64,000 bases of DNA. It comes from Ylistrum balloti. Its lineage: Eukaryota. Below, piece after piece: positions 4,832 to 51,166 of this stretch. Positions within the stretch are counted from its first letter, which is position 1; the number at the start of each line of letters is the position of its first letter. The stretch covers positions 1 through 64,000 of the forward strand of contig NW_026782399.1 of NCBI RefSeq assembly GCF_031769215.1, written 5' to 3'. Under the pieces are notes generated by a model. The model ran no database searches. It was not told the DNA's origin and worked only from the letters and a program-made list of their open reading frames with translations. The position numbers and the translations under genes were made by a program.

Positions 4832-5090
4832 TTTTAAAAAGTTTTCATTAAAATATGTTAATCTTAACTAAGTTTTTAAAACAATTATTTGACTATATTA
4901 CTTTAATAATATAGATGAGCAGAAAAAAATGAATAAAAAGAATAAAGTTAACATGGTAAACAAAGATTTAGAAGCTAATCGAATTATCTCAAATTCACTT
5001 AATAAATTTAGCTTATCAAAAATAGCACTCTTTTTAATATTGTTAGTTTTTATACTTATTGCTTGTAGTGACACAGACAGTGGTGGTAGC
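4832..5090 (+). repeat. Duplicated upstream region plus lipoprotein leader (second copy 6354..6612; shorter copies before 7937 and 8338)
   Basis: Near-identical sequence at a 1522-bp offset, from TTTTAAAAAGTTTTC through GACAGTGGTGGTAGC. Confidence 0.9.
4893..4914. promoter_or_regulatory. Inverted repeat CTATATTA-N6-TAATATAG overlapping a TTGACT hexamer; identical copies at 6415..6436, 7904..7925, 8302..8323
   Basis: Perfect 8-bp arms 11-14 nt upstream of each locus-1 paralog start; operator role is inferred. Confidence 0.45.
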
Positions 5091-6263
5091 ATCATCGTGT
5101 TTGTGCCTATTACAGACAGTGGTGATAGCACCCCCGTGCCTATTTACACCCTCACCTATTCTACCGCTTTTAAGGACAACACCAATGATATAGACGGATT
5201 GGGTGGGGCGCTATCTGTTGCCGTTAGTCTTGATGGAAGCAATGTCTATGTGGCAAGTTCTTTCGATCATGCTTTGGCAGTGTTTAATAGAAATACGACA
5301 ACTGGCGTACTCACCTATTCCACTAATTTTAAAGACAATACTAATGGAGTGGACGGATTGGGTGGGGCGGAATCTGTGACCGTTAGTCCTGATGGAAACA
5401 ATGTCTATGTGGCAGGTCGGGATGATGATGCCTTGGCAGTGTTTAATAGAGATACGACAACTGGTGCACTCATCTATAGCACCGTTTTTAAAGATGGACA
5501 AGGTGGAGTGGACGGATTGGATGGGGCGGAATCTGTGACCGTTAGTCCTGATGGAAACAATGTCTATGTGGCAGGTCGGGATGATGATGCCTTGGCAGTG
5601 TTTAATAGAGATACGACAACTGGTGCACTCATCTATAGCACCGTTTTTAAAGATGGACAAGGTGGAGTGGACGGATTGGGTGGGGTGCAATCTGTGACCG
5701 CTAGTCCTGATGGAAACAATGTTTATGTGGTAGGTCGGGATGATGATGCCTTGGCAGTGTTTAATAGAGATACGACAACTGGTGCACTCATCTATAGCAC
5801 CGTTTTTAAAGACGGACAAAATGGAGTGGATGGATTGAATAGTGTTCGATCTGTGACCGTTAGTCCTGATGGAAACAATGTCTATGTGGTAGGTAATAGC
5901 GATAGAGCCTTGGCGGTGTTTAACAGGAATAAGACAACTGGTGTACTTATCTATAGCACCGTTTTTAAAGACGGACAAGGTGGAGTGGATGGATTGTATG
6001 GTGCTCAATCTGTCACCGTTAGTCCTGATGGAAACAATGTCTATGTGGTAGGTGATTTCGATGATGCCTTGGCAGTGTTTAATAGAAATACGACAACTGG
6101 CACACTCATCTATTCCACTAATTTTAAAGACGGACAAGGTGGAGTGGACGGATTGGATGGGGCTCAATCTGTGACCGTTAGTCCTGATGGAAACAATGTC
6201 TATGTGGTGGCAAGTTTGAACGATCATGCCTTGGCAGTGTTTAACAGGAGTAGGATCCAGTGA
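4929..6263 (+). CDS. Lipoprotein with 7-bladed beta-propeller (lactonase/YVTN-like 53-aa repeats), no InlB repeat
   Basis: Lipobox LIA-C46; seven repeats YSTxFKDGxxGVDGLxGAxSVTVSPDGNNVYVxGxxDDALAVFNRxTTTGxL with a 159-bp period. Confidence 0.85.
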   Translation: MNKKNKVNMVNKDLEANRIISNSLNKFSLSKIALFLILLVFILIACSDTDSGGSIIVFVPITDSGDSTPVPIYTLTYSTAFKDNTNDIDGLGGALSVAVSLDGSNVYVASSFDHALAVFNRNTTTGVLTYSTNFKDNTNGVDGLGGAESVTVSPDGNNVYVAGRDDDALAVFNRDTTTGALIYSTVFKDGQGGVDGLDGAESVTVSPDGNNVYVAGRDDDALAVFNRDTTTGALIYSTVFKDGQGGVDGLGGVQSVTASPDGNNVYVVGRDDDALAVFNRDTTTGALIYSTVFKDGQNGVDGLNSVRSVTVSPDGNNVYVVGNSDRALAVFNRNKTTGVLIYSTVFKDGQGGVDGLYGAQSVTVSPDGNNVYVVGDFDDALAVFNRNTTTGTLIYSTNFKDGQGGVDGLDGAQSVTVSPDGNNVYVVASLNDHALAVFNRSRIQ

Positions 6264-6450
6264 AAATGTTGATTCTCGGCTTTATTTATTTGACTTTATT
6301 TAGTAATAAGCGGTGTTTTTCGAGCTCGAGCTTAATTCCACTTGACAAAATCATTTTAAAAAGTTTTCATTAAAATATGTTAATCTTAACTAAGTTTTTA
6401 AAACAATTATTTGACTATATTACTTTAATAATATAGATGAGCAGAAAAAA

Positions 6451-7542
6451 ATGAATAAAAAGAATAAAGTTAACATAGCAAACAAATATTTAGAAGCTAA
6501 TCGAATTATCTCAAATTCACTTAATAAATTTAGCTTATTAAAAATAGTACTCTTTTTAATATTGTTAGTTTTTATATTTATTGCTTGTAGTGATACAGAC
6601 AGTGGTGGTAGCACCACTACGCCTATTTACACCGTAATCTTTAATACAGACGGTGGTAGCACGGTTGTTTCCCAGCAAGTCAATTCTGGTGAGAAAGCAA
6701 CTGAACCTACCGATCCTACACGAGCAAATTACAGCTTTAGTGGATGGTACGAAGATGAATCATTGACCACTATTTTTTATTTTGAAAGTACGATAGTTAC
6801 TAACGACCTAACTCTGTATGCCAAATGGAACATAATAGAATATACTCTCACCTATAGCACCGTTTTTAAAGATGGACAAGATGGAGTAGACGGATTGGAA
6901 GGGGCATTTTCTGTCACCGTTAGTCCTGATGGAGAAAGTGTCTATGTGGTAGGTTTTGACGATGATGCCTTGGCAGTGTTTAACAGAGATACAACAACTG
7001 GGGCACTTACCTATAGCACCGTTTTTAAAGATGGACAAGATGGCGTGGACGGATTAGATGGGATAACCTCTGTCGTGGTTAGTCCTTATGGAAACAATGT
7101 CTATGTGGTAGGCTATAATGATAATGCCTTGGCAGTGTTTAACAGAGATACGGCAACTGGCGCACTTACCTATAGCACCGTTTTTAAAGATGGACAAGAT
7201 GGCGTGGACGGATTGAATAGAGCATCTTCTGTTACCGTAAGTTCTGATGGAAACAATGTGTATGTGGCAGGTCGGGATGATGATGCCTTGGCAGTGTTTA
7301 ACAGAGATACGGCAACTGGCGCACTTACCTATAGCACCGTTTTTAAAGACGGACAAGGTGGAGTAGACGGATTGGGGGGTACTCTATTTGTCACCATTAG
7401 CCCTGATGGAAACAATGTCTATGTGGCAGGTCGAGATGATAATGCCTTGGCAGTGTTTAACAGAGATACGGCAACTGGCGTACTCACCTATAGTACCGTT
7501 TTTAGAGACGGACAAGATGGCGTGGACGGATTAGTCACCTGA
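6451..7542 (+). CDS. Lipoprotein with 1 InlB B-repeat plus propeller, truncated after 4 intact blades
   Basis: FIA-C lipobox; FNTDGGS...FSGWY...LTLYAKW unit; stops at DGLVT* where the fifth blade has a deletion. Confidence 0.8.
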   Translation: MNKKNKVNIANKYLEANRIISNSLNKFSLLKIVLFLILLVFIFIACSDTDSGGSTTTPIYTVIFNTDGGSTVVSQQVNSGEKATEPTDPTRANYSFSGWYEDESLTTIFYFESTIVTNDLTLYAKWNIIEYTLTYSTVFKDGQDGVDGLEGAFSVTVSPDGESVYVVGFDDDALAVFNRDTTTGALTYSTVFKDGQDGVDGLDGITSVVVSPYGNNVYVVGYNDNALAVFNRDTATGALTYSTVFKDGQDGVDGLNRASSVTVSSDGNNVYVAGRDDDALAVFNRDTATGALTYSTVFKDGQGGVDGLGGTLFVTISPDGNNVYVAGRDDNALAVFNRDTATGVLTYSTVFRDGQDGVDGLVT

Positions 7543-7874
7543 TGGAAACAATGTCTATGTGGCAGTTGATGACGGTGTTTGACAGATGATAACTGGTGCC
7601 TTACCTATAGCACCGTTTTTAAAGACAGAGATACGGCAACTGACCGGCGATGGAAACAATATCTATCTGATGGCAATTTTTAATAGTTTTGTTGATGCCT
7701 TGGCAGTGTTTTTAGTACTCACCTATAGTACCGTTTTTAAAGACGGTAATAAAGGTGTGGACGGATTGGGTGGGGCGAAATCTGTGACCGTTAGTCCTGA
7801 TGGAAACAATGTCTATGTGATAAGTGCTTCAGGATGATGCCTTGGCAGTGTTTAACAGGAGTAGTAGCCAGTGA
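7543..7874 (+). pseudogene. Scrambled remnants of blades 5-7 of the 6451 gene
   Basis: Blade DNA fragments with several small indels; ends with the paralog terminus AGGAGTAGTAGCCAGTGA; extra T near 7831 (AGTGCTTCAGGATGA vs paralog AGTTCTCAGGATGAT). Confidence 0.75.
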
Positions 7875-7936
7875 AATTGCGATTCTCGGCTTTATTTATT
7901 TGACTATATTACTTTAATAATATAGATGAAAAAAAA

Positions 7937-8272
7937 ATGAATAAAAGAATAAAGTTAACACAGTAAACAAATATTTAGAAGCTAATCGAATTATCTCAAA
8001 TTGACTGGAAATTTAGCTTATTAAAAATAGCATTCTTTTTAATATTGTTAGTTTTTATACTTATTGCTTGTAGTGACACAGACAGTGGTGGTAGCATCAC
8101 CGGACCTATTTACACCTTTAACTATAGTACCGTTTTTAAAGACGGACAAGGTGGAGTGGACGGATTGGGTGGGGCGAAATCTGTGACCGTTAGTCCTGAT
8201 GGAAACAATGTCTATGTGGTAAGTTCTCAGGATGATGCCTTGGCAGTGTTTAACAGGAGTAGTAGCCAGTGA
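7937..8272 (+). pseudogene. One-blade paralog with frameshifted leader
   Basis: ATGAATAAAAGAAT has one A fewer than paralog ATGAATAAAAAGAAT, plus another indel near 8000; lipobox IACSDTDSGG is joined directly to one terminal blade ending RSSSQ*. Confidence 0.8.
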
Positions 8273-8337
8273 AATTGCGATTCTCGGCTTTATTTATTTG
8301 ACTATATTACTTTAATAATATAGATGAGCAGAAAAAA

Positions 8338-9639
8338 ATGAATAAAAAGAATAAAGTTAACACAGTAAACAAATATTTAGAAGCTAATCGAATTATCTCA
8401 AATTCACTTAATAAATTTAGCTTATTAAAAATAGCATTCTTTTTAATATTGTTAGTTTTTATACTTATTGCTTGTAGTGACACAGACAGTGGTGGTAGCA
8501 TCACCGGACCTATTTACACCTTTAACTATAGCACCGTTTTTAAAGACGGTACTAACGGTGTGGACGGATTGGGTGGGGCGAAATCTGTGACCGTTAGTCC
8601 TGATGGAAACAATGTCTATGTGGGAGGTTGGGATGATGATGCCTTGGCAGTATTTAACAGAAACACGACAACTGGAGCACTTACCTATTCCACTAATTTT
8701 AAAGATGGACAAGATGGACAAGATGGAGTGGATGGATTGGGTCATGCAATCTCTGTCACGGTAAGTCCTGATGGAAACAATGTCTATGTGGCAGGCTATA
8801 ATGATGATGCCTTGGCAGTGTTTAACAGAAACACGACAACTGGTGCACTCACCTATAGCACCGTTTTTAAAGACGGTACTAACGGTGTGGATGGATTGAA
8901 AGGGGCATATTCTGTCACGGTAAGTCCTGATGGAAACAATGTGTATGTGGCAGGTTTTGACGATGATGCCTTGGCAGTGTTTAACAGAAACACGACAACT
9001 GGTGCACTCACCTATAGTACCGTTTTTAAAAACGGTACTAACGGTGTGGATGGATTGGATGGTCCAGCCGCTGTCATGGTTAGTCCAGATGGGGAAAATG
9101 TCTATGTGGCAGGCTATAATGATGATGCCGTGGCAGTGTTTAACAGAAATACAACAACTGGTGTACTCACTTATAGCACCGTTTTAAAAGACGGAGTAAA
9201 TGGTGTGGACGGATTGGATGGTCCAGTCGCTGTCACCGTTAGCCCTGATGGAAACAATGTGTATGTGGTAAGTCTTGTCGATGATGCTTTGGCTGTGTTT
9301 AACAGAAATACAACAACTGGTGTACTCACTTATAGCACCGTTTTAAAAGACGGTACTAACGGTGTGGACGGATTGGATGGGGCGAAATCTGTGACCGTTA
9401 GTCCTGATGGAAACAATGTCTATGTGGTGAGTTCTCAGGATGATGCCTTGGCAGTGTTTAACAGAAACACGACAACTGGGGCACTCAACTATAGCACCAT
9501 TTTTAAAGACGGTACTAACGGTGTGGACGGATTGGATGGGGCATATTCTGTCACGGTTAGCCCTGATGGAAACAATATCTATGTGGTAAGTGAGGAGGAT
9601 GATGCCTTGGCAGTGTTTAATAGGAGTAGTAGCCAGTGA
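8338..9639 (+). CDS. Lipoprotein with 7-bladed beta-propeller, no InlB repeat
   Basis: LIA-C lipobox; seven 53-aa blades; blade 2 carries a 9-bp duplication (DGQDGQDG, 8704-8727). Confidence 0.85.
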   Translation: MNKKNKVNTVNKYLEANRIISNSLNKFSLLKIAFFLILLVFILIACSDTDSGGSITGPIYTFNYSTVFKDGTNGVDGLGGAKSVTVSPDGNNVYVGGWDDDALAVFNRNTTTGALTYSTNFKDGQDGQDGVDGLGHAISVTVSPDGNNVYVAGYNDDALAVFNRNTTTGALTYSTVFKDGTNGVDGLKGAYSVTVSPDGNNVYVAGFDDDALAVFNRNTTTGALTYSTVFKNGTNGVDGLDGPAAVMVSPDGENVYVAGYNDDAVAVFNRNTTTGVLTYSTVLKDGVNGVDGLDGPVAVTVSPDGNNVYVVSLVDDALAVFNRNTTTGVLTYSTVLKDGTNGVDGLDGAKSVTVSPDGNNVYVVSSQDDALAVFNRNTTTGALNYSTIFKDGTNGVDGLDGAYSVTVSPDGNNIYVVSEEDDALAVFNRSSSQ

Positions 9640-17523: not shown

Positions 17524-18369
17524 TTGGAAACAAGATTTTCCTTTCATGATGAAAGAAATTTTGGTAGTCATCCCATTGAATATAAATTTGGAAACAAAAA
17601 CAAAAATTCTTTTCAATCATTCGTTCAATTAATTTTGTCTACTTTTAAGTATTATCGAGGCATGCCATTTGAGTATATTTTTGGGAAGGCTTCATTTCTC
17701 GAAGACGAATTTATAGTGAACCGGCATACTCTTATTCCCCGTCCTGAAACGGAGGAATTAGTTTCTAAAGTCATTACAGATCCTTATTTTACTTACCTTC
17801 TTGAACGTTCAAATAAAAAAAATATAAAAATTCTTGATATTGGAACAGGTTGTGGAGTGATCGGAATTACTTTGAAAAAATACTTTTCTAATGCCGATAT
17901 AACAGGGGTGGATATTTCTAGTTCAGCTCTTCGAGTAGCAAAAAGAAATCATCAAAGAATTCTTCCTAAATCTATCAAGAATGGAATAAGGTGGATAAAT
18001 GCAGATGTTTTTTCAGGGGAAGTTTCCAAAAAGTTGAATGAAGAAAGGTTCGATTTAATTGTTTCCAATCCTCCCTACATTGGTTGGGAAGAAAAAAAAG
18101 ATTTATCTTCTTCAGTTGTCGACTATGAACCTTCCATCGCTTTATTTGCAGGATGGGATGGATTGGATTTTTACAGGAATTTGTCCTATCATCTTGATGG
18201 GTGGCTTGAGAAGGAGGGAATGGTTTATTTAGAATTGGGCTGGAAGCAAGGAGAGAAGGTAAAAAGACTTTTCCCTTTTCTCAAAGGAGAACTACAAGAA
18301 GACATCTTCGGGAAAACTCGTTTTTTCCGTGGGCTTTGTAAAAATAACAATTTTAAAGATAAAAAATAA
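17524..18369 (+). CDS. prmC: Release factor glutamine methyltransferase
   Basis: LIPRPETEEL, LDIGTGCG, SNPPY, ALFAGWDGL. Confidence 0.92.
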   Translation: METRFSFHDERNFGSHPIEYKFGNKNKNSFQSFVQLILSTFKYYRGMPFEYIFGKASFLEDEFIVNRHTLIPRPETEELVSKVITDPYFTYLLERSNKKNIKILDIGTGCGVIGITLKKYFSNADITGVDISSSALRVAKRNHQRILPKSIKNGIRWINADVFSGEVSKKLNEERFDLIVSNPPYIGWEEKKDLSSSVVDYEPSIALFAGWDGLDFYRNLSYHLDGWLEKEGMVYLELGWKQGEKVKRLFPFLKGELQEDIFGKTRFFRGLCKNNNFKDKK

Positions 18370-18585
18370 AAAATTTTAGTTGTAATCAGAAAAATTCCAA
18401 ATAATCTTTTTTTCCAAACTCTCTTCGTCAAATACTTAAAATTCCATTAATTCCTAATACGCAGATATTCACTGCTAATCAAAATAAAAAATTTATGGGA
18501 ATTCGATGATCACTGTCTCTAAAGTTGTGAACTTTCTTAGCTGATTCTTTGAATTGAATAAAAATCAAAACTAATTTTTCTAACT

Positions 18586-19659
18586 TTGAATTTCGATATT
18601 ATAGAGATGGTGAATCATACTGAATTGAATGAAGTAGCTGAAAACGAAGAAGTTTTGCAGGAAGAGGATCAAAATTTAAGACAGGAATCTTATTACTATA
18701 TTAAGGTTAAATACGGAAATTCAAAAGGTAGAATGAAAGCCTTCCAGATTTTTTTATGTGGACTTTTAGGTATAGAGATAAATAGAAATTTTAGTTCCGA
18801 TTTATTTGAAGTTACCTTCCTTAATCAACCTAAGATTATTTTTTCGAACTTTGAAATTGTTTTTGAAAAATTTAATGTCAATATGGGATTTCAAGAATTT
18901 TTAGGTGAACTGGAAAAACTTTATCTCACTACTGTTAAGAATCATTTTTTTGTCTACAATAACTTTATTAAGCGAATGAAGAAAGAATTTTATAACAAAA
19001 AATTTGAATTTAAAAAAAACTTATCACACCAAAAAATTTTAGAAATGCTTTATGAGCGTATTAATTTTTTTTTTGAAACTCAATGGAACCTTAAAGATGC
19101 TGAATTAGAAATGAAGTCAGAGAAGGTTAGTAAAGATAAATTTTTTAATTTTAAGGGAAATACTATGGATGAAATCAATAAAGAAAAAGAAACCAATGAA
19201 GACAAAGAAATCAATGATGAGTCAGAAGAAGAAACTATTCAATGGAATTTAGATCCAGAGGTAGGTGTTAAAACATACCTTCCTGTCATTGATCCTGTTC
19301 ATGGAAGGGTGGCTACTGATTTAAAAAAAAATGACAAGATCTATGTTTCTCTTAATAAAGATAATGAAAAATCAATTTATCCTTACCGTTACTCTGATGT
19401 GAAGTTAGGAAAAATTATAGATATTAAAAGAAATGAGAAAGGTATTTTACACTTTTTAGTTGAATTGGATTCAGGTAAATTTGGAGATGTTGAAGTTGAT
19501 GATGAATTTTTTAAAATTAAGAAATACCTTAATGGAGAAGCAACAATTAAACGGGAAAAGAGGAAAAACATACAAGTGATTCTTGATTTTTGTTTAGTGT
19601 TTTTTTCTATCATGATGATTTACTCTTTTCTGTTTGTCTCTATCTCTTTTATTTTTTAA
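18586..19659 (+). CDS. Hypothetical protein with C-terminal TM anchor (tentatively DUF4899-like)
   Basis: 357-aa ORF; LPVIDPVHG...LKKNDKIYV segment recalls DUF4899; unverified. Confidence 0.5.
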   Translation: MNFDIIEMVNHTELNEVAENEEVLQEEDQNLRQESYYYIKVKYGNSKGRMKAFQIFLCGLLGIEINRNFSSDLFEVTFLNQPKIIFSNFEIVFEKFNVNMGFQEFLGELEKLYLTTVKNHFFVYNNFIKRMKKEFYNKKFEFKKNLSHQKILEMLYERINFFFETQWNLKDAELEMKSEKVSKDKFFNFKGNTMDEINKEKETNEDKEINDESEEETIQWNLDPEVGVKTYLPVIDPVHGRVATDLKKNDKIYVSLNKDNEKSIYPYRYSDVKLGKIIDIKRNEKGILHFLVELDSGKFGDVEVDDEFFKIKKYLNGEATIKREKRKNIQVILDFCLVFFSIMMIYSFLFVSISFIF

Positions 19660-19665
19660 TTAATA

Positions 19666-22398
19666 GTGAGGAAAACAATTCTTATTGATTGCTATGGTCT
19701 TTTTTATAGGTCCTATTATGCCTTTATAAAAAATCCCCTTGTAAACAGTAAGGGCGAAGAAACCTCTGTTATTTTCTCTTTTTTTAATTCACTACACAAG
19801 GTGATTAAGGAACGGGAGCACGATCATCTTGTTTGTGTTTTGGATTCCAAAGGCAAAACATTTCGTCATGAAATCTTCAAAGAGTATAAGGCTCATCGTC
19901 CACCTATGCCGAATAGTCTTTCAAAGCAGATAAAAGTTATCGTTCAAGTGCTTGATTTCTTGGGCATTCCAGTTGTTTCAAAAACCTCTTTGGAAGCTGA
20001 TGATCTCATTGCTCATTACTCGAGACAATCACAAGAAGAAGTAGAAATTTTCTCTCACGATAAGGACTTGATGCAACTAGTCAATGAAAGAGTCCGTGTT
20101 GTTCAATTAGATCGCCAAAACCAACAGTATGTGATTTTTGATCAAGAGAGAGTCGAAAAAAAATTCCAGACACCACCCAACCATCTTGTTGACTACTTAT
20201 CCTTGATGGGGGACAGTAGCGATAATATTCCCGGTGTAAAGGGAGTGGGTGAGAAAACCGCTGTCATGCTCATCAATGAATTTGGCGATCTTGATTCCAT
20301 CTATAAAAATTTAGATAAGATTCCAGAGAAACATAGGAAAAAGTTGATTCAGGATAAGAACTCAGCATTCATTTCTAGGGAATTAGTTTGCTTGAAAGAG
20401 CAATTAAATCGCCTTGACAAGTCTTTCATCGAAGATCTTCCTTCACTTAATGATCTCACTTATCAGTCTTGTCAAGCTGAAAAAATAAAAGACATTTGGG
20501 AACTACATGAATGCACTTCCTTGATTAAAAAGTATTCACTCCTCCCACCATTTGAAAAAATTGAAGGGAAAACCATCCTTGAGATTTTGAAAGGTATCTC
20601 ACCAACTGAAATTACAGAAGATAAAAATCACCTGAAGAGGTTCACTAGACACACCCTGCATCATGAAGAGTGGGGGGATCTTGTTGAAACAATAAAATTA
20701 CAAGGACAATTCGTCTTCGATTTGGAAACAACATCTTTAGTTCCTTTCGATGCTAAGGTGGTGTCGGCTGTTATTGTATTGCCAAATCAACACAGTTATT
20801 ACATTCCAGTTGTGACCCATAAACTAGACTTAGAAATGAAGTGGATCGAAACTTTTAAAAAAGTGCTTGGAAGCAATGAGATAAAAAAAATTGGACATAA
20901 TCTTAAATTTGAATATTCTATCTTAAAAGAAAAGGGAATTGAACTTAACGGAATCGAGCATGACACAATGATTCATGCTTACATGACTGAGCCAGACCTC
21001 AATGCATTCAAGTTAGAAGACCTGATTCAAAGTCATTTTGGGGTGAGTAAGCCTAGCTACAAAGAGATGAGTAAGGGGTATGAAAGCATCCTTGATATTC
21101 CAAAGGACCTATTGGAGGATTACACTTTTCAAGATGGGGAGTACACGACTTTACTTTATGAAATTCAAGTAAAAGGAAAGGCACTTAATGATAAGGAGTT
21201 GGACATTTACAAAAACTGGGAATTGCCTCTTCTTGTGGTACTTGCCAATATGGAATTTGAAGGAGTTGTTATTGACACGAACTATTTAAAAAATTTAGAA
21301 AAAATTCTCCAAACAAGTTTGTCGATTACTGAAAAAGAAATTATCGAATTAGCTGGCGAGGATTTTAATATTAATTCGACTAAGCAACTTCAAACTATTC
21401 TTTTTGAAAAATTGTCAATTAATCCTGTTAAGAAAACAAAAACCGGCTATTCCACGGATAACTATGTTTTAGAGAGATTAAAAAAGAATTATCCGATTGC
21501 TGAATCTTTATTGCAACACCGCAAGACAGCTAAACTTCTCAATACTTATGTGGAGGCACTTCCCAAATTAGTTCATCCTCGTACAGGTCGTATTCATACT
21601 CATTATAATCAATCCGTTACGGCTACAGGTCGGCTGAGTTCCACTTCTCCTAACTTGCAAAACATTCCAGTTAGTGAGGGAAGCCAGGGCATCCGTCGTG
21701 CTTTCGTGGTTGATTCGGGTTACGAAATTGTATCCATTGACTATTCCCAAGTAGAATTAAGGATTGTGGGTTTTTTATCTAAGGATGCCAAACTTCTAGA
21801 AGCCTATGAAAGTAATCGGGACATTCACACTCAAACCGCTCACCTATTATTTGGAAAGCCGATGGAGGATGTTCTCTCGGAGGAGAGAAAAATTGCCAAG
21901 ACGATTAATTTTTCAGTTATCTATGGCATATCGGCTTTCTCATTAGCAGAAGACTTGGGCATACCCCGTAACGATGCTCAAGTGTTTATTGACATATTTT
22001 TTTCAAATTACTCCAATGTGAAGAGTTATCAAGAAAAAATCCTTCACCAAGCTAGAACAAATGGTTGGGTGGAAACTTATTTCGGAAGGAAACGTTACAT
22101 CAAGGACATTAATTCTGAAAACATGATTGTAAAAAACCGTGCTGAGAGAATCGCCTTCAACACGGTCATTCAAGGGACTGCTTCCGATATCATTAAACGA
22201 GCAATGGTGAATGTTCAAAAAAAATTTGTAGGTTCACCGATCAAAATGGTCATGCAGGTGCATGATGAATTGGTTTTCTATGTGCCTACAGATTTAGTTA
22301 AAAAGACCGTCCCTCAACTTGAAAAATTATTAATTGATATTACACCTTTTGACGGAATATTAACCGTCAATACTACAATAGAGAAGCATTGGGGGTAG
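19666..22398 (+). CDS. polA: DNA polymerase I
   Basis: 5'-3' exonuclease (LMGDSSDNIPGVKGVG), 3'-5' exonuclease (FDLETT), polymerase (DYSQVELR, AKTINFSVIYG, QVHDEL). Confidence 0.97.
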   Translation: MRKTILIDCYGLFYRSYYAFIKNPLVNSKGEETSVIFSFFNSLHKVIKEREHDHLVCVLDSKGKTFRHEIFKEYKAHRPPMPNSLSKQIKVIVQVLDFLGIPVVSKTSLEADDLIAHYSRQSQEEVEIFSHDKDLMQLVNERVRVVQLDRQNQQYVIFDQERVEKKFQTPPNHLVDYLSLMGDSSDNIPGVKGVGEKTAVMLINEFGDLDSIYKNLDKIPEKHRKKLIQDKNSAFISRELVCLKEQLNRLDKSFIEDLPSLNDLTYQSCQAEKIKDIWELHECTSLIKKYSLLPPFEKIEGKTILEILKGISPTEITEDKNHLKRFTRHTLHHEEWGDLVETIKLQGQFVFDLETTSLVPFDAKVVSAVIVLPNQHSYYIPVVTHKLDLEMKWIETFKKVLGSNEIKKIGHNLKFEYSILKEKGIELNGIEHDTMIHAYMTEPDLNAFKLEDLIQSHFGVSKPSYKEMSKGYESILDIPKDLLEDYTFQDGEYTTLLYEIQVKGKALNDKELDIYKNWELPLLVVLANMEFEGVVIDTNYLKNLEKILQTSLSITEKEIIELAGEDFNINSTKQLQTILFEKLSINPVKKTKTGYSTDNYVLERLKKNYPIAESLLQHRKTAKLLNTYVEALPKLVHPRTGRIHTHYNQSVTATGRLSSTSPNLQNIPVSEGSQGIRRAFVVDSGYEIVSIDYSQVELRIVGFLSKDAKLLEAYESNRDIHTQTAHLLFGKPMEDVLSEERKIAKTINFSVIYGISAFSLAEDLGIPRNDAQVFIDIFFSNYSNVKSYQEKILHQARTNGWVETYFGRKRYIKDINSENMIVKNRAERIAFNTVIQGTASDIIKRAMVNVQKKFVGSPIKMVMQVHDELVFYVPTDLVKKTVPQLEKLLIDITPFDGILTVNTTIEKHWG

Positions 22399-25547: not shown

Positions 25548-25553
25548 AAAATG

Positions 25554-25627
25554 CGCGTCCGGTAGGATTTGAACCCACGACCCTCTGATCCGAAGTCAGA
25601 TGCTCTAATCCGCTGAGCTACGAACGC
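25554..25627 (-). tRNA. tRNA-Arg (anticodon UCG), CCA not encoded
   Basis: Reverse complement GCGTTCG...TCTGA-CTTCGGA-TCAGA...GGTTCAAATCC...CGGACGC-G; acceptor, anticodon and T stems pair. Confidence 0.95.
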
Positions 25628-25689
25628 TTTTTTAAATTATATCATTAGTTGGAATTTTTAAAAGTGTTAATGAGGTGTGTGAAAGTGAT

Positions 25690-27414: not shown

Positions 27415-27480
27415 TTTAAAACCTCATATTTATAAATTGTTTATCTCCATAACTATGTTTGAATTCTCATTTAATAATAA
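27411..27480. repeat. Degenerate second copy of the res 3' end (direct repeat with 28727..28798)
   Basis: TCATTTTAAAACCTCAT..AAATTGTTTATCT(T)CCATAACTATGTTTGAATTCTCA is present at both positions. Confidence 0.88.
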
Positions 27481-27498
27481 AAACAATGCTAAAACGTA

Positions 27499-27608
27499 TC
27501 GAAATTTTGTCATTTTTTCGACATATCACCAATAATATGTCGAAATTTTGTCATTTTTTCGACATATCACCAATAATATGTCGAAATTTTGTCATTTTTT
27601 CGACATAT
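27499..27608. repeat. 41-bp tandem repeat (2.7 identical copies) built of 11-bp inverted arms
   Basis: Unit TCGAAATTTTGTCATTTTTTCGACATATCACCAATAATATG starts at 27499, 27540 and 27581; arms ATATGTCGAAA / TTTCGACATAT. Confidence 0.92.
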
Positions 27609-27612
27609 AATT

Positions 27613-28719: not shown

Positions 28720-28726
28720 CTCTCCT

Positions 28727-31308: not shown

Positions 31309-31401
31309 TTTTCTTCTTCTGTATATTCTTTGATATTATACAATATGATATTTATACTACTGTACTTTGCTACACTTCGTCCTAATTACAAATTAGGGAA
31401 A

Positions 31402-44669: not shown

Positions 44670-46379
44670 ATGAATAAAACCAGTAAAATTAACACAACAA
44701 ACAAAGCTTTAAAAGCTAATCAAATTACTTTCCATTCATTAATAATTAAGTTCAGACTCTCACAATTAATATTACTATTATTGTCTTTTCTTCTTCTTAC
44801 ATCTTGTTTTTTTGATAAAATTAACCCCACTTACACAACAACTTTTGACAGTCAAGGTGGAAGCACGGTTCCAGATCAGCAAGTCAATTATGGCGAGAAA
44901 GTAACTCAACCTTCTAATCCTACACGAGTAAATTATAACTTTGGTGGATGGTATGAAGATGAATCATTGACCACTATTTTTAATTTTGCAAATACAGTAA
45001 TCACTAGTGATCGAACTTTGTATGCCAAATGGAACGCAGGTCAAAACGCAGTTCAATATGCCGTAACATTTGATAGTCAGGGTGGAAGCACGGTTACAGC
45101 GCAACAAGTCAATTCTGGCGAGAAAGTAATTCAACCTTCTAATCCTACACGAACACATTACAACTTTGGTGGATGGTATCAAGATGAATCATTGACCACT
45201 GTTTTTGATTTTGAAAATACAGTAATCACTAGTGATCGAACTTTGTATGCCAAATGGAACATAATAGAATACACCTTCACCTATGGTGCCGTTTTTAAAG
45301 ATGGAGTAAATGGTGTGGACGGATTGAATCATGCAGAATCTGTTGCCGTTAGTCCAGATGGGAACAATGTCTATGTGACAGGTTTTAAAGATGATGCCGT
45401 GGCAGTGTTTAACAGAAATACAACAACTGGTGTACTCACTTATAGCACCATTTTAAAAGACGGAGTAAATGGTGTGGACGGATTGGATGGTGTATATTCT
45501 ATCACCGTTAGTCCAGATGGAAAGAATGTTTATGTGACAGGTTATTACGATAATACTTTGGTAGTGTTTAACAGAAATAGGACAACTGGGGCACTCACCT
45601 ATAGCACCTTTTTTGAAGACGGACGATTTGGTGTGGACGGATTAAATGAAGCAGCTTCTGTCATCGTTAGTCCAGATGGGAACAATGTCTATGTGGCAGG
45701 TTATCAAGATGATGCCGTGGCAGTGTTTAACAGAAATACAGCAACTGGGGCACTCGACTATAGCACCATTTTTAAAGACGGAGTAGATGGTGTGGACGGA
45801 TTGGATGGAGCTCAATCTGTCACCGTTAGTCCAGATGGGGAAAATGTGTATGTGGCAGGTTATCAAGATGATGCCGTAGCAGTGTTTAACAGAAATACGA
45901 CAACTGGTGTACTTACCTATAGCACCGTTTTTAAAGACGGAGTAAATGGTGTGGACGGATTGGATGGAACTCAATCTGTCACCGTTAGCTCTGATGGGAA
46001 CAACGTGTATGTGGCAGGTTATGAAGATGATGCCGTAGCAGTGTTTAACAGAAATACAACAACTGGTGGACTCACCTATAGCACTGTTTTAAAAGACGGG
46101 CAAGGTGGTGTGGACGGATTATTTGGTTCAACTTCTGTCATTGTTAGTCCTGGTGGAAACGATGTCTATGTGGCAGGTTATAATGATTCTGCCGTGGTAG
46201 TGTTTAACAGAAATACGACAACTGGAGCACTCACTTATAGCACCGTTTTTAAAGACGGAGTAAATGGTATGGACGGATTGGCTGGTGCTCGATCTGTTGC
46301 CGTTAGCCCTGATGGAAAAAATATCTATGTTGCAAGTGAGAATGATAATGCCTTGGCAGTGTTGAACGGTAGCGAGTGA
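44670..46379 (+). CDS. Lipoprotein with 2 InlB B-repeats plus 7-bladed beta-propeller
   Basis: LTS-C lipobox; two FDSQGGS...GGWY...LYAKW units; seven blades ending GSE*. Confidence 0.87.
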   Translation: MNKTSKINTTNKALKANQITFHSLIIKFRLSQLILLLLSFLLLTSCFFDKINPTYTTTFDSQGGSTVPDQQVNYGEKVTQPSNPTRVNYNFGGWYEDESLTTIFNFANTVITSDRTLYAKWNAGQNAVQYAVTFDSQGGSTVTAQQVNSGEKVIQPSNPTRTHYNFGGWYQDESLTTVFDFENTVITSDRTLYAKWNIIEYTFTYGAVFKDGVNGVDGLNHAESVAVSPDGNNVYVTGFKDDAVAVFNRNTTTGVLTYSTILKDGVNGVDGLDGVYSITVSPDGKNVYVTGYYDNTLVVFNRNRTTGALTYSTFFEDGRFGVDGLNEAASVIVSPDGNNVYVAGYQDDAVAVFNRNTATGALDYSTIFKDGVDGVDGLDGAQSVTVSPDGENVYVAGYQDDAVAVFNRNTTTGVLTYSTVFKDGVNGVDGLDGTQSVTVSSDGNNVYVAGYEDDAVAVFNRNTTTGGLTYSTVLKDGQGGVDGLFGSTSVIVSPGGNDVYVAGYNDSAVVVFNRNTTTGALTYSTVFKDGVNGMDGLAGARSVAVSPDGKNIYVASENDNALAVLNGSE

Positions 46380-46496
46380 AACTAGTGGATAAAATTATCT
46401 TTGGTCAAAGAAATTATATAAAAATATACGCATTAATTAATGTAAAAATATGTGAATTTAAAAATTTATTTTAAATCTTATTTAAGAGAGTAAAAA

Positions 46497-49459
46497 ATGA
46501 ATAAAACCAGTAAAATTAACACAACAAACAAAGCTTTAAAAGCTAATCAAATTACTTTCTATTCACCCTCACAATTAATATTACTATTATTGTCTTTTAT
46601 CCTTCTTACATCTTGTTTTAAAAGAATTTACCCTACTTATGAAATAACATTTGATAGTCGAGGCGGTAGCATGATTCTTCCCCAGGAAATCAATTATGGC
46701 GAGACAGTAACTGAACCTTCTAATCCTACACGAGTAAATTATAACTTTGGTGGATGGTACGAAGATGAATCATTGACCACTATTTTTGATTTTGAAAATA
46801 TGATAGTTACTAACGACCTAACTCTTTATGCCAAATGGAATGCAGTTCAATATACCATAACATTTGACAGTCAAGGTGGTAGCACGGTTCCAGCTCAGCA
46901 AGTCAATTATGGCGAGACAGTAATTCAACCTTCTAATCCTACACGAGTAAATTATAACTTTGGTGGATGGTACGAAGATGAATCATTGACCACTGTTTTT
47001 AATTTTGCAAATATGGTAGTTACTAACGACCTAACTCTTTATGCCAAATGGAACGCAGATCAAAACGCAGTTCAATATACCATAACATTTGACAGTCAAG
47101 GTGGAAGCACGGTTCCAGATCAACAAGTCAATTCTGGAGAGACAGTAATTCAACCTTCTAATCCTACACGAACACATTACAACTTTGGTGGATGGTATCA
47201 AGATGAATCATTGACTACTGTTTTTAACTTTGCAAATACAGTAATCACTAGCGATCGAACTTTGTATGCCAAATGGAACAGAATTGAATATACCGTAACA
47301 TTTGATAATCAAGGTGGAAGCACGGTTCCAGATCAACAAGTCAATTCTGGAGAGACAGTAATTCAACCTTCTAATCCTACACGAACACATTACAACTTTG
47401 GTGGATGGTATCAAGATGCATCATTGACTACTGTTTTTAATTTTGCAAATACAGTAATCACTAGTGATCGAACTTTGTATGCCAAATGGAATGCAGTTCA
47501 ATATACCATAACATTTGACAGTCAAGGTGGAAGCACGGTTACAGCGCAACAAGTCAATTCTGGAGAGACAGTAATTCAACCTTCTAATCCTACACGAACA
47601 CATTACAATTTTGGTGGATGGTATCAAGCATCATTGACTACTGTTTTTAATTTTGTAAATACAGTAATCACTAGTGATCGAACTTTGTATGCCAAATGGA
47701 ACAGAATTCAATATGCCGTAACATTTGATAGTCAGGGTGGTAGCACGGTTCCAGATCAACAAGTCAATTCTGGAGAGACAGTAATTCAACCTTCTAATCC
47801 TACACGAACACATTACAACTTTGGTGGATGGTATCAAGATGAATCATTGACCACTGTTTTTAACTTTGCAAATACAGTAATCACTAGTGATCGAACTTTG
47901 TATGCCAAATGGAATGCAGTTCAATATACCATAACATTTGACAGTCAAGGTGGAAGCACGGTTACAGCGCAACAAGTCAATTCTGGAGAGAAAGTAATTC
48001 AACCTTCTAATCCTACACGAACACATTACAACTTTGGTGGATGGTATCAAGATGCATCATTGACTACTGTTTTTAATTTTGTAAATACAGTAATCACTAG
48101 TGATCGAACTTTGTATGCCAAATGGAACAGAATTCAATATGCCGTAACATTTGATAGTCAGGGTGGTAGCACGGTTACAGCGCAACAAGTCAATTCTGGA
48201 GAGAAAGTAACTCAACCTTCTAATCCTACACGAACACATTACAACTTTGGTGGATGGTATCAAGATGAATCATTGACCACTGTTTTTGATTTTATAAATA
48301 CAGTAATCACTAGTGACCAAACTTTATATGCCAAATGGAACATAATAGAATACACCTTCACCTATGGTGCCGTTTTTAAAGACGGGCAAGGTGGTGTGGA
48401 CGGATTGAATCATGCAGAATCTGTTGCCGTTAGTCCAGAGGGGAAAATGTCTATGTGACAGGTTTTAAAGATGATGCCGTGGCAGTGTTTAACAGAAATA
48501 CAACAACTGGTGTACTCACTTATAGCACCGTTTTTAAAGACGGGCAAGGTGGTGTGGACGGATTGGATGGTGTAGATTCTATCACCGTTAGTCCAGATGG
48601 AAACAATGTTTATGTGACAGGTTATTACGATAATACTTTGGTAGTGTTTGACAGAAATAGGACAACTGGGGCACTCACCTATAGCACCTTTTTTGAAGAC
48701 GGACGCTTTGGTGTGAACGGATTAAATGAAGCAGCTTCTGTCATCGTTAGTCCAGATGGGAACAATGTCTATGTGGCAGGTTATAAAGATGATGCCGTGG
48801 CAGTGTTTAACAGAAATACAGCAACTGGGGCACTCGCCTATAGCACCATTTTTAAAGACGGAGTAGATGGTGTGGACGGATTGAATGGAGCTCAATCTGT
48901 CACCGTTAGCTCTGATGGAAAAAATATCTATGTGGCAGGTTATAATGATGATTCCGTAGCAGTGTTTAACAGAAATACGAAAACTGGTGTACTTGCCTAT
49001 AGCACCGTTTTAAAAGACGGGCAAGGTGGTGTGGACGGATTGGATGGAGCTCAATCTGTCACCGTTAGTCCAGATGGGGAAAATGTCTATGTGGCAGGTT
49101 ATCAAGATAATGCCGTGGCAGTGTTTAACAGAAATACGACAACTGGGGCACTCACCTATAGCACCGTTTTTAAAGACGGAGTAAATGGTGTGGACGGATT
49201 AGTTGGTTCAACTTCTGTCATTGTTAGTCCTGGTGGAAACGATGTCTATGTGGCAGGTTATGAAGGTAATGCATTGGCAGTGTTTAACAGAAATACGACA
49301 ACTGGAGCACTCACCTATAGTACCGTTTTTAAAGACGGAGTAAATGGTATGGACGGATTGGCTGGTGCTCGATCTGTTGCCGTTAGTCCTGATGGAAAAA
49401 ATATCTATGTTGCAAGTGAGAATGATAATGCTTTGGCAGTGTTGAACGGTAGCGAGTGA
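46497..49459 (+). pseudogene. Lipoprotein with 8 InlB B-repeats plus 7-bladed propeller, split by a 1-nt deletion at 48439/48440
   Basis: ORFs 46497..48458 and 48455..49459 join if T is restored (CCAGAGGGGAAAAT vs paralog CCAGATGGGGAAAAT); head is nearly identical to that of the 44670 gene. Confidence 0.85.
46645..48350 (+). repeat. Tandem array of eight ~213-bp InlB B-repeat units
   Basis: 213-bp period (210 where a codon is lost near 47625); units 4-5 resemble units 6-7 as a 426-bp higher-order repeat. Confidence 0.9.
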
Positions 49460-49603
49460 AACTAGTGGATAAAATTATATTTGGTCAAAGAAATTCTATA
49501 AAAAATGTTATAATATTTTGGAATATACTCATTAATTAATGTAAAAGTATATAAGTTTAAAATTTATTTTATAGTATTTTTACTACTATAAAAAAGGGAA
49601 AAA

Positions 49604-51130
49604 ATGAATAAAAACAATAATATCATCAAAGCAATTAATCATTTGATAGCTAGCCAAATTAGATTAAATTCGCTAATTAAGTTTACTGGATCACCATTAA
49701 CCTTCTTCTTTGTTTTATGGACTTTTATAATCCTTACATCTTGTGGAAGTGGAATCGTAGAACCTGTTCACACCGTAACATTTAATACCGACGGCGGAAG
49801 TGCAATTGCTTCCCAGCAAGTCAATCACCGCGAGAAGGCTACAATGCCCACCGAGACCCCTACCTTTAGTGGTATGACATTTGAAGGGTGGTACCAAGAT
49901 GCAGCAGTGACCACTGTTTTTAACTTCGAAAATACAGAAATCAGAAGTAGTCTAACTGTGTATGCTAAGTGGAATGGGCATTCTTATTCCACCGTTTTAA
50001 AAAATAGCGAAAATGGGATACCTGATAACCCAAATTATAACCAAGCTAATAGAGCAATTACTGCTACTGCTAGCTCTGATGGAAAAAATGTCTATGTAAT
50101 GAGTAGTATATTGGGACTGGAGGTTTTGGTCGTGTTTAATAGAGATGCGACTACTGGTACACTCACCCATTCCACTAATATCTTTACGGCAGATGTAGGT
50201 GGAGGGACCGAAATGATGGGTGGTAGGGGTATCACCGTAAGTCCTGATGGAAAAAATGTATATGTATCTTTGTTCTCCTCTACTGCTCCTGCACCTGATG
50301 ATGGTGATGGCTTGGTAGTGTTTAACAGGAATACGACAACTGGATCACTCGCCTATAGCACCGTTTTAAAAGACAACAAGAATGGTGTGGATGGATTGGC
50401 TGGTGCATATACTATTACCGTTAGTCCTGATGGGAAAAATGTCTATGTGGCAGGTAGTACAGATGATGCCTTGGCAGTGTTTGACAGAGATACGACAACT
50501 GGGGCACTCACCTATAGCACCAATTTTAAAGACGGAGTAAATGGTGTGGACGGATTGGAAGGGGCAATCTTTATTGCGGTGAGCCCTGATGGGGAAAATG
50601 TCTATGTGGCAGGTTTTGACGATGATGCCTTGGCAGTGTTTAACAGAGATACGACAACTGGTGCACTCGCCTATAACGCCGTTTTTAAAGACAATCAAGG
50701 TGAAGTGGACGGATTGAATGAAGCATTTTCTGTCACCGTTAGTCCAGATGGGAAAAATGTCTATGTGGCAGGTTTTGAAGATGATGCCTTGGCAGTGTTT
50801 AACAGAGATACAGAAACTGGTGCACTTACCTATAGTAACGTTTTTAAAAACGGTACTAACGGGGTGGACGGATTGAATGGAGCATTTTCTGTCACCGTTA
50901 GTCCAGATGGGAAAAATGTTTATGTGGCAAGTGATGCAGATAATGCCTTAGTTGTGTTTAAAAGAAATACGACAACTGGTGCACTTACCTATAGTACCGT
51001 TTTTAAAGACGGAGTAAATGGTGTGGACGGATTGAAAGAAGCCCAATTTGTCACCCTTAGCCCCAATGGAAAAAGTATCTATGTGGGAGGTAGAGGAGAT
51101 GGTATTCTGGCAGTGTTTCACAGGAGGTAG
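49604..51130 (+). CDS. Lipoprotein with 1 InlB B-repeat plus 7-bladed propeller (blades 1-2 divergent, with loop insertions)
   Basis: LTS-C lipobox; FNTDGGS...FEGWY...YAKW; five consensus-like blades and two expanded ones. Confidence 0.85.
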   Translation: MNKNNNIIKAINHLIASQIRLNSLIKFTGSPLTFFFVLWTFIILTSCGSGIVEPVHTVTFNTDGGSAIASQQVNHREKATMPTETPTFSGMTFEGWYQDAAVTTVFNFENTEIRSSLTVYAKWNGHSYSTVLKNSENGIPDNPNYNQANRAITATASSDGKNVYVMSSILGLEVLVVFNRDATTGTLTHSTNIFTADVGGGTEMMGGRGITVSPDGKNVYVSLFSSTAPAPDDGDGLVVFNRNTTTGSLAYSTVLKDNKNGVDGLAGAYTITVSPDGKNVYVAGSTDDALAVFDRDTTTGALTYSTNFKDGVNGVDGLEGAIFIAVSPDGENVYVAGFDDDALAVFNRDTTTGALAYNAVFKDNQGEVDGLNEAFSVTVSPDGKNVYVAGFEDDALAVFNRDTETGALTYSNVFKNGTNGVDGLNGAFSVTVSPDGKNVYVASDADNALVVFKRNTTTGALTYSTVFKDGVNGVDGLKEAQFVTLSPNGKSIYVGGRGDGILAVFHRR

Positions 51131-51166
51131 TGAAACTAGTGGATAAAATTAATTTGGTTAAAGAAA

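What the first reader, a model, noticed from the sequence alone, without database searches (positions are those of the whole stretch)
4929..9639. Candidate combinatorial surface-receptor system: tandem arrays of 7-bladed propeller lipoproteins (locus 1; locus 2 at 44670-51283)
Seen: eight paralogous starts in two arrays about 35 kb apart. All follow one plan: long leader with lipobox Cys, 0-8 InlB B-repeats, then a head of 159-bp blades. Every complete head has exactly seven blades (about 40 readable blades in total). The scaffold is conserved down to synonymous codons (AGTCCTGATGGAAACAATGTCTATGTG, GATGCCTTGGCAGTGTTTAACAG), while short blocks vary and recur in new combinations. Intact, frameshifted, one-blade and leader-only copies sit side by side. 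Established: homogenised tandem modules are substrates for unequal crossing-over and gene conversion, and spirochetes diversify surface lipoproteins by recombination. Inference: a mix-and-match binding repertoire (adhesin or antigenic variation) on a propeller scaffold. I do not know a described system of this form, but I cannot search the literature.
Basis: partly seen in the sequence, partly recalled or inferred. Interest (0 to 1): 0.85.

Follow-up and report, generated by a model that had tools for sequence, protein, structure and literature searches.

The report
Tandem propeller-headed lipoprotein gene family
A bacterial contig inside a scallop genome assembly carries two clusters of duplicated lipoprotein genes with a seven-bladed propeller head; the copies have swapped short DNA stretches and differ mainly on one face, so they look like an ordinary, evolving family of binding proteins, and nothing shows a programmed switching system.

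Summary
Eight paralogous gene starts sit in two arrays (4929-9639 and 44670-51283). Each has a long lipobox leader, 0, 1, 2 or 8 Flg_new repeats, and 159-bp blades. A, D, E and G have seven intact blades. F has seven but is split by a one-base deletion. B is eroded, C has one blade, and H is a leader only.

The heads belong to a known and very widespread family, the highly repetitive PF10282 lactonase-like propellers. Gene D is already in RefSeq, mislabelled as a scallop protein. Variable residues fall in the two loop types that form the top face, and the same positions vary in distant relatives.

Recombination has clearly happened: a one-blade collapse product, a 102-bp tract 99% identical between the two loci, and block swaps between the youngest duplicates. 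However, blades cluster by gene, E and F are collinear, every full copy has its own start and leader, and no reverse transcriptase or recombinase is nearby. No reads could be obtained.

My best reading is a lineage-specific family of lipid-anchored binding proteins that evolves by duplication, loss and gene conversion. Programmed antigenic variation is unsupported. Three earlier notes of this scan on the same stretch agree with these points.

The parts
4929..6263 (+). Gene A: lipobox leader (Cys46), no Flg_new repeat, 7-blade propeller; intact, 444 aa
   Evidence: ORF. PF10282 E 1.5e-30. Seven blades at 159-bp spacing. Lipobox LIAC.
6451..7874 (+). Gene B, a pseudogene: leader, 1 Flg_new repeat and 4 intact blades (ORF to 7542), then blades 5-7 eroded by several deletions
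   Evidence: The alignment with A and D shows deletions of about 14 to 32 nt in blades 5-6.
7937..8272 (+). Gene C, a pseudogene: frameshifted leader plus one hybrid blade (blade-1 start, blade-7 end). Product of unequal recombination.
   Evidence: Sequence. Leader 96.6% identical to D. 404-bp repeat unit at 7723-8660, 93% match. Frame analysis.
8338..9639 (+). Gene D: leader, no stalk, 7-blade propeller; intact, 433 aa. Equals RefSeq XP_060077766.1, mislabelled as scallop.
   Evidence: AF2 model with pLDDT 92.3 showing 28 strands in 7 blades closed by the N-terminal strand.
9121..9222 (+). Tract at the D blade 4/5 junction that is 101/102 identical to E blade 1/2 (45390-45491): inter-locus gene conversion
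   Evidence: Exact matches of 60 and 41 nt. Identity is 99% against a mean of 79% (sd 14%) over 240 inter-locus pairs in the same register; the best same-gene partner is 91%.
44670..46379 (+). Gene E: leader (lipobox LTSC), 2 Flg_new repeats, 7 blades; intact, 569 aa
   Evidence: In the AF2 model the propeller is confident and the stalk is poorly modelled.
46497..49459 (+). Gene F: leader, 8 Flg_new repeats, 7 blades. Split into two ORFs by a 1-nt deletion in an A-run near 48445 (true frameshift or assembly error).
   Evidence: PF09479, 8 stretches. Alignment with E blade 1. Blades 2-7 are positional orthologues of E at 93% identity.
49604..51130 (+). Gene G: divergent paralogue with leader, 1 Flg_new repeat and 7 blades (the first two irregular, with spacings of 168 and 183 bp); intact, 508 aa
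51167..51283 (+). H: leader-only remnant (38 codons, then a stop)

Best explanation
The two arrays are a lineage-specific, tandemly expanded family of lipoproteins in an undescribed AT-rich diderm bacterium. PolA suggests a deep Spirochaetota lineage. The bacterium's contig sits in the Ylistrum balloti (scallop) assembly.

Each protein has three parts:
- an N-terminal lipid anchor (lipobox cysteine);
- an optional stalk of 0 to 8 Flg_new repeats;
- a rigid seven-bladed PF10282-type propeller built from near-identical 53-residue blades.

The propeller most likely works as a binding head, not as a lactonase. About nine positions per blade, in the D-A and B-C loops, differ between blades and between paralogues. 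By propeller topology these loops all lie on the top face. Each paralogue therefore presents a different surface on the same scaffold, at a different height.

The family evolves by duplication and loss together with concerted evolution. The events seen are whole-gene tandem duplication (E and F), homogenisation of blades within a gene, unequal crossing-over that collapses or erodes copies (C, B, H), and occasional short gene conversion within and between loci.

Shown here: the anatomy, the fold, family membership and the recombination footprints. Inferred: lipidation, surface exposure, the binding function and diversifying selection. Nothing indicates a programmed switching mechanism.
For: Anatomy and domains.

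Lipoprotein features: lipoboxes LIAC, FIAC or LTSC after 13-20-residue hydrophobic stretches, with Cys at 40-47 and S, F or G at +2. LspA is encoded at 34998-35609.

Fold: the AF2 model has pLDDT 92.3 and seven four-stranded blades. The nearest solved sequence relatives are 6PGL-like PF10282 propellers (E 1e-16 to 1e-19) and the YVTN S-layer propeller 1l0q.

Variable positions: codons 10-11, 17-20, 34 and 36-37 of the blade. They fall between strand 4 and the next strand 1, and between strands 2 and 3. The same positions vary between blades of distant family members (Spearman 0.69, p 1e-8).

Substitution rates: pN/pS is 1.06 in the variable codons against 0.37 in the scaffold. Between the E and F orthologues, variable-codon pN (0.176) exceeds scaffold pS (0.106).

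Blade tree: blades cluster by gene (16 label changes against 24.6 when shuffled, 0 of 500 shuffles as low) and by locus, but not by blade position. E and F pair position by position.

Recombination:
- PHI p 0.001 on gene alignments.
- The 102-bp inter-locus tract.
- The same 5-nt block swap in E/F blades 1, 2, 5 and 6.
- 19 of 21 synonymous and 40 of 46 non-synonymous E-F differences reuse states found in other blades, against 58% and 43% expected.
- The hybrid copy C.

Literature: Flg_new is treated as a stalk domain of fibrillar adhesins (10.1101/2021.12.07.471604). Repetitive lactonase-like propellers are a described class (PMC9218822).
Against: No expression, lipidation, localisation or ligand data exist. 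No sequencing runs could be listed.

pN/pS near 1 in the variable codons also fits relaxed constraint. Gene conversion confounds any selection estimate.

The taxon is only weakly placed. The best named PolA hit is 45% (Spirochaetota), and GuaA is uninformative.

That the variable loops share one face rests on secondary structure plus canonical propeller topology. Model coordinates could not be inspected.

The stalk was not modelled with confidence. The F frameshift may be an assembly error.
Confidence: 0.65

Rival explanations
1. Programmed combinatorial or antigenic variation. The arrays, including the broken copies, would act as a donor and acceptor repertoire. Frequent segmental gene conversion would change the exposed propeller face within a population, as in vls, tprK or pilE/pilS.
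For: Gene-conversion footprints within and between loci. Broken copies lie next to intact ones. Variable patches are flanked by near-identical scaffold that could guide recombination. RuvA and RuvC are in the window.
Against: Every full copy has its own start codon, leader and conserved upstream region, so there are no promoterless cassettes feeding one expression site. Blades cluster by gene, and E and F are collinear. Only a handful of exchange events are visible, and 32 of 37 patch-2 alleles are unique or nearly so. No reverse transcriptase or dedicated recombinase lies in the 64 kb. MutS is intact. The apparent host is an invertebrate. No population data exist.
Confidence: 0.12
2. Neutral family expansion without functional diversification. 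The variable loop positions are simply unconstrained, and the copies are redundant or decaying.
For: pN/pS is about 1 in the variable codons. Three or four of the eight copies are broken. The same positions are variable across the whole family.
Against: Between the youngest duplicates, variable-codon pN exceeds scaffold pS. Four or five long ORFs of 433-569 aa stay intact despite repeat instability. The variable positions cluster in the loop types that form the classical binding face of propellers.
Confidence: 0.13
3. Paralogous periplasmic enzymes: lactonases or cycloisomerases of the PF10282 family with different substrates.
For: The best sequence and fold matches are 6-phosphogluconolactonase-type propellers (1ri6, 6nau, 4qrj) and the periplasmic gluconolactonase PpgL (6igb). 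RefSeq names gene D 6-phosphogluconolactonase-like.
Against: All NCBIfam lactonase equivalog scores (39-66 bits) are far below their cut-offs of 370-500. Blades are near-identical copies, which leaves little room for an asymmetric active site. A stalk of adhesin-type repeats and a lipid anchor are not typical enzyme features. Structurally the model fits repetitive binding propellers (WRAP, WD40) about equally well.
Confidence: 0.08
4. Assembly artefact. Repeats were mis-joined, so the copy number, the broken copies or the inter-locus tract are not real.
For: Repeat arrays are hard to assemble. The frameshifts in F and in the C leader lie in A-runs, a typical long-read error. No reads were available.
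Against: Copies differ by 5-20% and each has unique flanks among housekeeping genes. The erosion of B consists of several multi-base deletions, not homopolymer slips. Related genomes also carry several paralogues.
Confidence: 0.05

Closest known systems
Highly repetitive lactonase-like (PF10282) beta-propellers, annotated by NCBI as 'beta-propeller fold lactonase family protein' (Pereira and Lupas 2022, PMC9218822)
   Same: Same Pfam family and the same 53-residue blade consensus. The same loop positions vary. Blade numbers come in multiples of seven (7, 14, 21, 28). Gene-specific blade signatures resemble the independent amplification described in that paper. More than 3900 relatives at 40-67% identity occur in many phyla.
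   Different: Elsewhere there is usually one gene per locus; only 5 of 159 fetched loci have two adjacent propeller genes. Here there are eight starts in two arrays, with lipobox leaders, Flg_new stalks of different lengths and visible exchange between loci.
Staphylococcus aureus lpl tandem lipoprotein cluster (Tsuru and Kobayashi 2008, PMC2568036)
   Same: Tandem paralogous lipoprotein genes recombine at conserved internal sequence. The conserved unit runs from the 3' end of one gene, through the spacer, into the 5' end of the next. Here that unit is the 404-bp repeat, and leaders are 95-97% identical while heads are about 80% identical.
   Different: Unrelated protein fold and phylum. Here the conserved recombination substrate is repeated seven times per gene. 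There are no multi-strain data.
Leptospira Lp49 (PDB 3bws) and other propeller lipoproteins
   Same: A spirochaetal membrane lipoprotein with an N-terminal beta-sandwich domain and a C-terminal seven-bladed propeller. The literature groups it with the lactonase-like families (PMC9218822).
   Different: Only a weak profile match (E 3e-4). Lp49 blades are not near-identical, and it is not known to me as a tandem family (own knowledge).
Fibrillar or 'periscope' adhesins with variable-length stalks (Monzon and Bateman, 10.1101/2021.12.07.471604)
   Same: An anchor, a stalk of near-identical tandem domains whose number varies (Flg_new is listed as a stalk domain) and a distal head.
   Different: Those are mostly Gram-positive wall-anchored proteins with the head at the N-terminus. 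Here the anchor is an N-terminal lipid, the head is C-terminal, and adhesion is untested.
Cassette-based antigenic variation (Borrelia vlsE, Treponema tprK, Neisseria pilE/pilS)
   Same: Surface protein genes with conserved framework and variable patches, nearby partial copies, and gene-conversion footprints.
   Different: There is no single expression site with silent promoterless cassettes. No population-level variation has been shown. The host probably lacks adaptive immunity.

Membership tests
PF10282 lactonase-like seven-bladed beta-propeller | Pfam model above its gathering score | tested here: met
   78-134 bits against a cut-off of 21.7 for all six propeller-bearing ORFs.
PF10282 lactonase-like seven-bladed beta-propeller | Seven four-stranded blades forming a closed ring | tested here: met
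   AF2 model with pLDDT 92.3 and 28 strands, with the N-terminal strand completing the last blade. Foldseek TM 0.81 to 1ri6. VIA Z 37-39 to seven-bladed propellers.
PF10282 lactonase-like seven-bladed beta-propeller | Lactonase or cycloisomerase activity and active-site residues | not testable with these tools
   NCBIfam 6PGL equivalogs score 39-66 bits against cut-offs of 370-500. No residue-level test was possible.
Bacterial lipoprotein (Lgt/LspA pathway) | Lipobox [LVI][ASTVI][GAS]C after a hydrophobic stretch and a basic N-region | tested here: met
   LIAC (A, D) and LTSC (E, F, G). B has FIAC, with F at position -3. Four to seven K/R residues lie upstream.
Bacterial lipoprotein (Lgt/LspA pathway) | Signal peptidase II present in the genome | tested here: met
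   LspA (TIGR00077, 85 bits against a cut-off of 74) at 34998-35609.
Bacterial lipoprotein (Lgt/LspA pathway) | Actual lipidation and surface exposure | not testable with these tools
   Needs experiment.
Flg_new / Listeria-Bacteroides repeat (PF09479) | Pfam model above its gathering score, in tandem copies | tested here: met
   1 copy in B and G, 2 in E, 8 in F (550 bits). 213-bp array at 90% match.
Cassette-type antigenic variation system | One expression site plus promoterless, start-less silent cassettes | tested here: not met
   All full copies keep the ATG, the leader and the conserved upstream region.
Cassette-type antigenic variation system | Segmental variation within one population | not testable with these tools
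   No sequencing run was listed.
Diversity-generating retroelement | Reverse transcriptase with a template repeat near the variable region | tested here: not met
   No reverse transcriptase among the ORFs of at least 150 aa that were scanned. This covers the 64-kb window only.
Recently amplified or highly repetitive propellers (PMC9218822) | High blade-to-blade identity with gene-specific blade signatures | tested here: met
   Mean blade DNA identity is 80%, and 84% within A, B and D. Blades cluster by gene.
Tandem paralogue cluster of the lpl type (PMC2568036) | A conserved unit spanning the 3' end, the spacer and the 5' end of adjacent genes | tested here: inconclusive
   The 404-bp unit is 93% matched, and leaders at 95-97% contrast with heads at about 80% in locus 1. 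In locus 2 the pattern is reversed (leaders 85%, heads 93%). There is no multi-strain comparison.

The most novel reading that the evidence does not exclude
The two arrays, with their broken copies as donors, form an actively recombining repertoire. It would remodel the ligand-binding face of a propeller lipoprotein within a host-associated population. That would be a propeller-based counterpart of the vls, tprK or vlp systems in a bacterium living with an invertebrate, perhaps driven by host lectins or phages rather than antibodies.
Probability: 0.12. Interest if true: 0.75.

Novelty: new variant of a known kind. Interest (0 to 1): 0.38.

Why it matters
The locus is a compact natural example of how a symmetric repeat fold behaves once it is duplicated into a gene family. 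It shows blade homogenisation, collapse to a single blade, erosion, changes in stalk length and exchange between loci, all within 64 kb.

If the binding role holds, it would show a propeller with about sixty variable loop residues used as a diversifiable recognition surface by a bivalve-associated bacterium. That would be of interest for host-microbe adhesion and for the design of propeller binders.

It also flags bacterial genes annotated in RefSeq as scallop proteins.

Tried and rejected
- Reads test: the look-up of sequencing runs listed no run. The decisive population test could not be done.
- Close relatives: scans of genome and metagenome contigs with gene D found only distant family members. 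None had the same leader or a similar GC content.
- Taxonomy: GuaA gave 52-55% identity to many phyla, and cluster look-ups gave no names. PolA gave a graded series whose only named member is a Spirochaetota bacterium at 45%. The 57% PolA relative shows no synteny.
- Promoter and terminator scans were no better than shuffled sequence.
- PHI on the blade alignment is window-dependent (p 0.001 at 25 nt, 0.40 at 40 nt). It is confounded by multi-base codon changes, so I gave it little weight.
- The stalk model of E was of low confidence.
- VIA structural ranking does not separate propeller families; all Z values are about 37-39.
- My first registration of F blade 1 was off by one base. Those F1 rows are disregarded, and one search gives the correct alignment.
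- A paper on a six-bladed lactonase (PMC12362111) proved irrelevant to this seven-bladed family.
Full report
**Observation**

Both loci are as described. ORF listing, TRF and motif searches show tandem 159-bp units (81-87% match) and a 213-bp array of 7.9 copies.

Blastn with the leaders and an alignment of the upstream regions find eight related starts: A 4929, B 6451, C 7937, D 8338, E 44670, F 46497, G 49604 and H 51167.

- A, D, E and G are intact, with seven blades each.
- F has eight Flg_new repeats and seven blades. It is split by a single-base deletion in an A-run near 48445. This could be real or an assembly error.
- B has four good blades followed by three that carry several multi-base deletions.
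- C has a frameshifted leader and one blade that starts like blade 1 of D and ends like blade 7.
- H is a 38-codon leader remnant.
- There are no N runs in the window.

**What the proteins are**

Pfam assigns the heads to PF10282 (lactonase, seven-bladed propeller; 78-134 bits against a cut-off of 21.7). It assigns the stalk units to PF09479 Flg_new, with 0, 1, 2 and 8 copies. NCBIfam lactonase equivalogs score far below their cut-offs.

The leaders have 4-7 basic residues, a hydrophobic stretch of 13-20 residues and lipoboxes LIAC, FIAC or LTSC. The cysteine lies at position 40-47 and is followed by S, F or G. Signal peptidase II is encoded at 34998-35609.

An AlphaFold model of D (pLDDT 92.3) has 28 strands in seven four-stranded blades. 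The N-terminal strand completes the last blade. Foldseek places it nearest E. coli YbhE and Klebsiella 6-phosphogluconolactonase (TM 0.80-0.81). Profile search of the PDB gives 6PGL-like propellers at 1e-16 to 1e-19, the archaeal YVTN S-layer propeller at 1e-14 and Leptospira Lp49 at 3e-4. A VIA re-ranking puts repetitive and WD40 propellers on a par, so the fold alone does not discriminate between families.

**Where the DNA comes from**

The window is bacterial chromosome. It carries TruA, TolQ, TatD, GuaA, YebC, RuvC, RuvA, LepB, PrmC, PolA, HemB, HflX, FolC, DprA, MutS, CmoA/B and ADP-heptose epimerase.

Gene D is identical, apart from a spliced-on start, to RefSeq XP_060077766.1, '6-phosphogluconolactonase-like [Ylistrum balloti]', on a 70,996-bp contig. 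So this is a bacterial contig in a scallop assembly.

GuaA does not place the organism. PolA gives a graded series of hits (57, 56, 50, 47 ... 42%) above a plateau of 38-41%. The only named member of that series is a Spirochaetota bacterium at 45%. The spirochete premise is therefore plausible but weak.

**The family is known and widespread**

A search with D returned more than 3900 relatives at 40-67% identity, from Chloroflexota, Thioploca, SAR202, Planctomycetota, Saprospiraceae, Solirubrobacterales and a clam-associated Spirochaeta MAG.

A 31-sequence alignment gives the same blade consensus, with ambiguity at the same positions. In 159 fetched loci the blade counts per ORF are mostly 7, 14, 21 or 28. 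One ORF, cut off at both ends of its locus, shows 47 blades. Only five loci have two adjacent propeller genes. Five further neighbourhoods have single genes.

Pereira and Lupas list two lactonase-like families among highly repetitive propellers and describe gene-specific blade signatures (PMC9218822). The fold, the scaffold and the seven-blade rule are thus family properties. What is unusual here is the local expansion into arrays.

**Variation**

In 37 register-aligned blades, the high-entropy codons are 10-11, 17-20, 34 and 36-37. On the model these fall between strand 4 and strand 1 of the next blade, and between strands 2 and 3. By canonical propeller topology (established knowledge) these are the D-A and B-C loops, both on the top face. 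I could not inspect coordinates, so this last step is inference.

The same positions vary between blades of distant relatives (Spearman 0.69).

| Comparison | Codon class | pS | pN | pN/pS |
|---|---|---|---|---|
| All blade pairs | Variable | 0.46 | 0.49 | 1.06 |
| All blade pairs | Scaffold | 0.27 | 0.10 | 0.37 |
| E-F orthologues | Variable | 0.027 | 0.176 | - |
| E-F orthologues | Scaffold | 0.106 | 0.042 | - |

They suggest diversifying selection but do not prove it, because gene conversion confounds the estimate.

**Recombination**

A maximum-likelihood blade tree clusters blades by gene (16 label changes against 24.6 when shuffled, 0 of 500 as low) and by locus (4 against 12.5). It does not cluster them by blade position (24 against 25.6). 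E and F are the exception and pair position by position.

Within-gene identity (0.84) exceeds positional identity between genes (0.80) in locus 1. Leaders in locus 1 are 95-97% identical while heads are about 80%. In locus 2 the reverse holds.

PHI is significant on gene alignments (p 0.001 and 0.007). On the blade alignment it depends on the window size.

Concrete events:
- C lies in a 404-bp repeat unit made of the last blade, the spacer, the leader and the first blade. This is the signature of unequal crossing-over.
- 9121-9222 (D blades 4/5) is 101/102 identical to 45390-45491 (E blades 1/2). The mean for that register is 79% (sd 14%) over 240 inter-locus pairs, and the best partner within D is 91%.
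- E and F differ by 3 to 21 sites per blade. The same five-base block swap occurs at patch 1 in blades 1, 2, 5 and 6.
- 19 of 21 synonymous and 40 of 46 non-synonymous E-F differences use states present in other blades, against 58% and 43% expected (p 0.001 and 6e-10).

**Why not a programmed system**

- Exchange is visible but sparse. Patch 2 has 32 alleles in 37 blades.
- Every full copy has its own start codon, leader and conserved upstream region.
- No reverse transcriptase or dedicated recombinase was found among the window's ORFs.
- MutS is intact.
- The probable host lacks antibody-based immunity.
- The decisive test, population variation, could not be run because no sequencing run was listed.

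**Verdict**

This is a lineage-specific family of lipid-anchored propeller proteins with stalks of different length. It evolves by duplication and loss, and is most likely a set of binding heads. It is a new variant of known kinds: repetitive PF10282 propellers, and tandem lipoprotein clusters such as S. aureus lpl (PMC2568036). Interest is moderate.

Noticed in passing
window 25553-31600: A low-GC island (25-27% against 35-39%) lies next to tRNA-Arg(TCG). It carries a truncated N6/N4 DNA methylase, a Fic/SoFic-like adenylyltransferase (27613-28719) and two ORFs without Pfam hits (28727-29380; 29449-31308, 619 aa). It is probably horizontally acquired.
   Followed up: partly
window 27499-27608: A perfect 41-bp tandem repeat, 2.7 copies at 100% match, just downstream of the minus-strand Fic gene, next to its stop codon.
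   Followed up: no
window 8338-9639 and 17524-22398: RefSeq annotates bacterial genes of this contig as scallop proteins. XP_060077766.1 is gene D with an artificial spliced start. A 1099-aa 'DNA polymerase I, thermostable-like [Ylistrum balloti]' carries methyltransferase Pfam domains as well as PolA domains, so it may join the upstream PrmC methyltransferase gene to PolA.
   Followed up: partly
window 5211-6227 (minus strand): A 338-aa antisense ORF runs through gene A, and similar ones run through the other arrays. They are by-products of the repeated codon pattern, not genes.
   Followed up: no
window 59858-61330: Another, unrelated beta-propeller/FG-GAP protein (PF13570, PQQ_2, FG-GAP_3), 490 aa.
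   Followed up: no
L160 and L161 (SRR30680104, SRR14371676): Contigs from two other public runs carry GuaA at 72% and 64% identity. L161 has the same gene order GuaA-YebC-RuvC-RuvA-LepB-PrmC; L160 shares GuaA-YebC-RuvC before the contig ends. Relatives of this bacterium therefore exist in other samples.
   Followed up: partly
L007 (Thermoanaerobaculia MAG, JAXLQW010000001.1): One open frame of more than 12.5 kb, cut at both ends of the fetched locus, holds at least 47 blades of the same family, which is roughly seven propellers in one protein.
   Followed up: no
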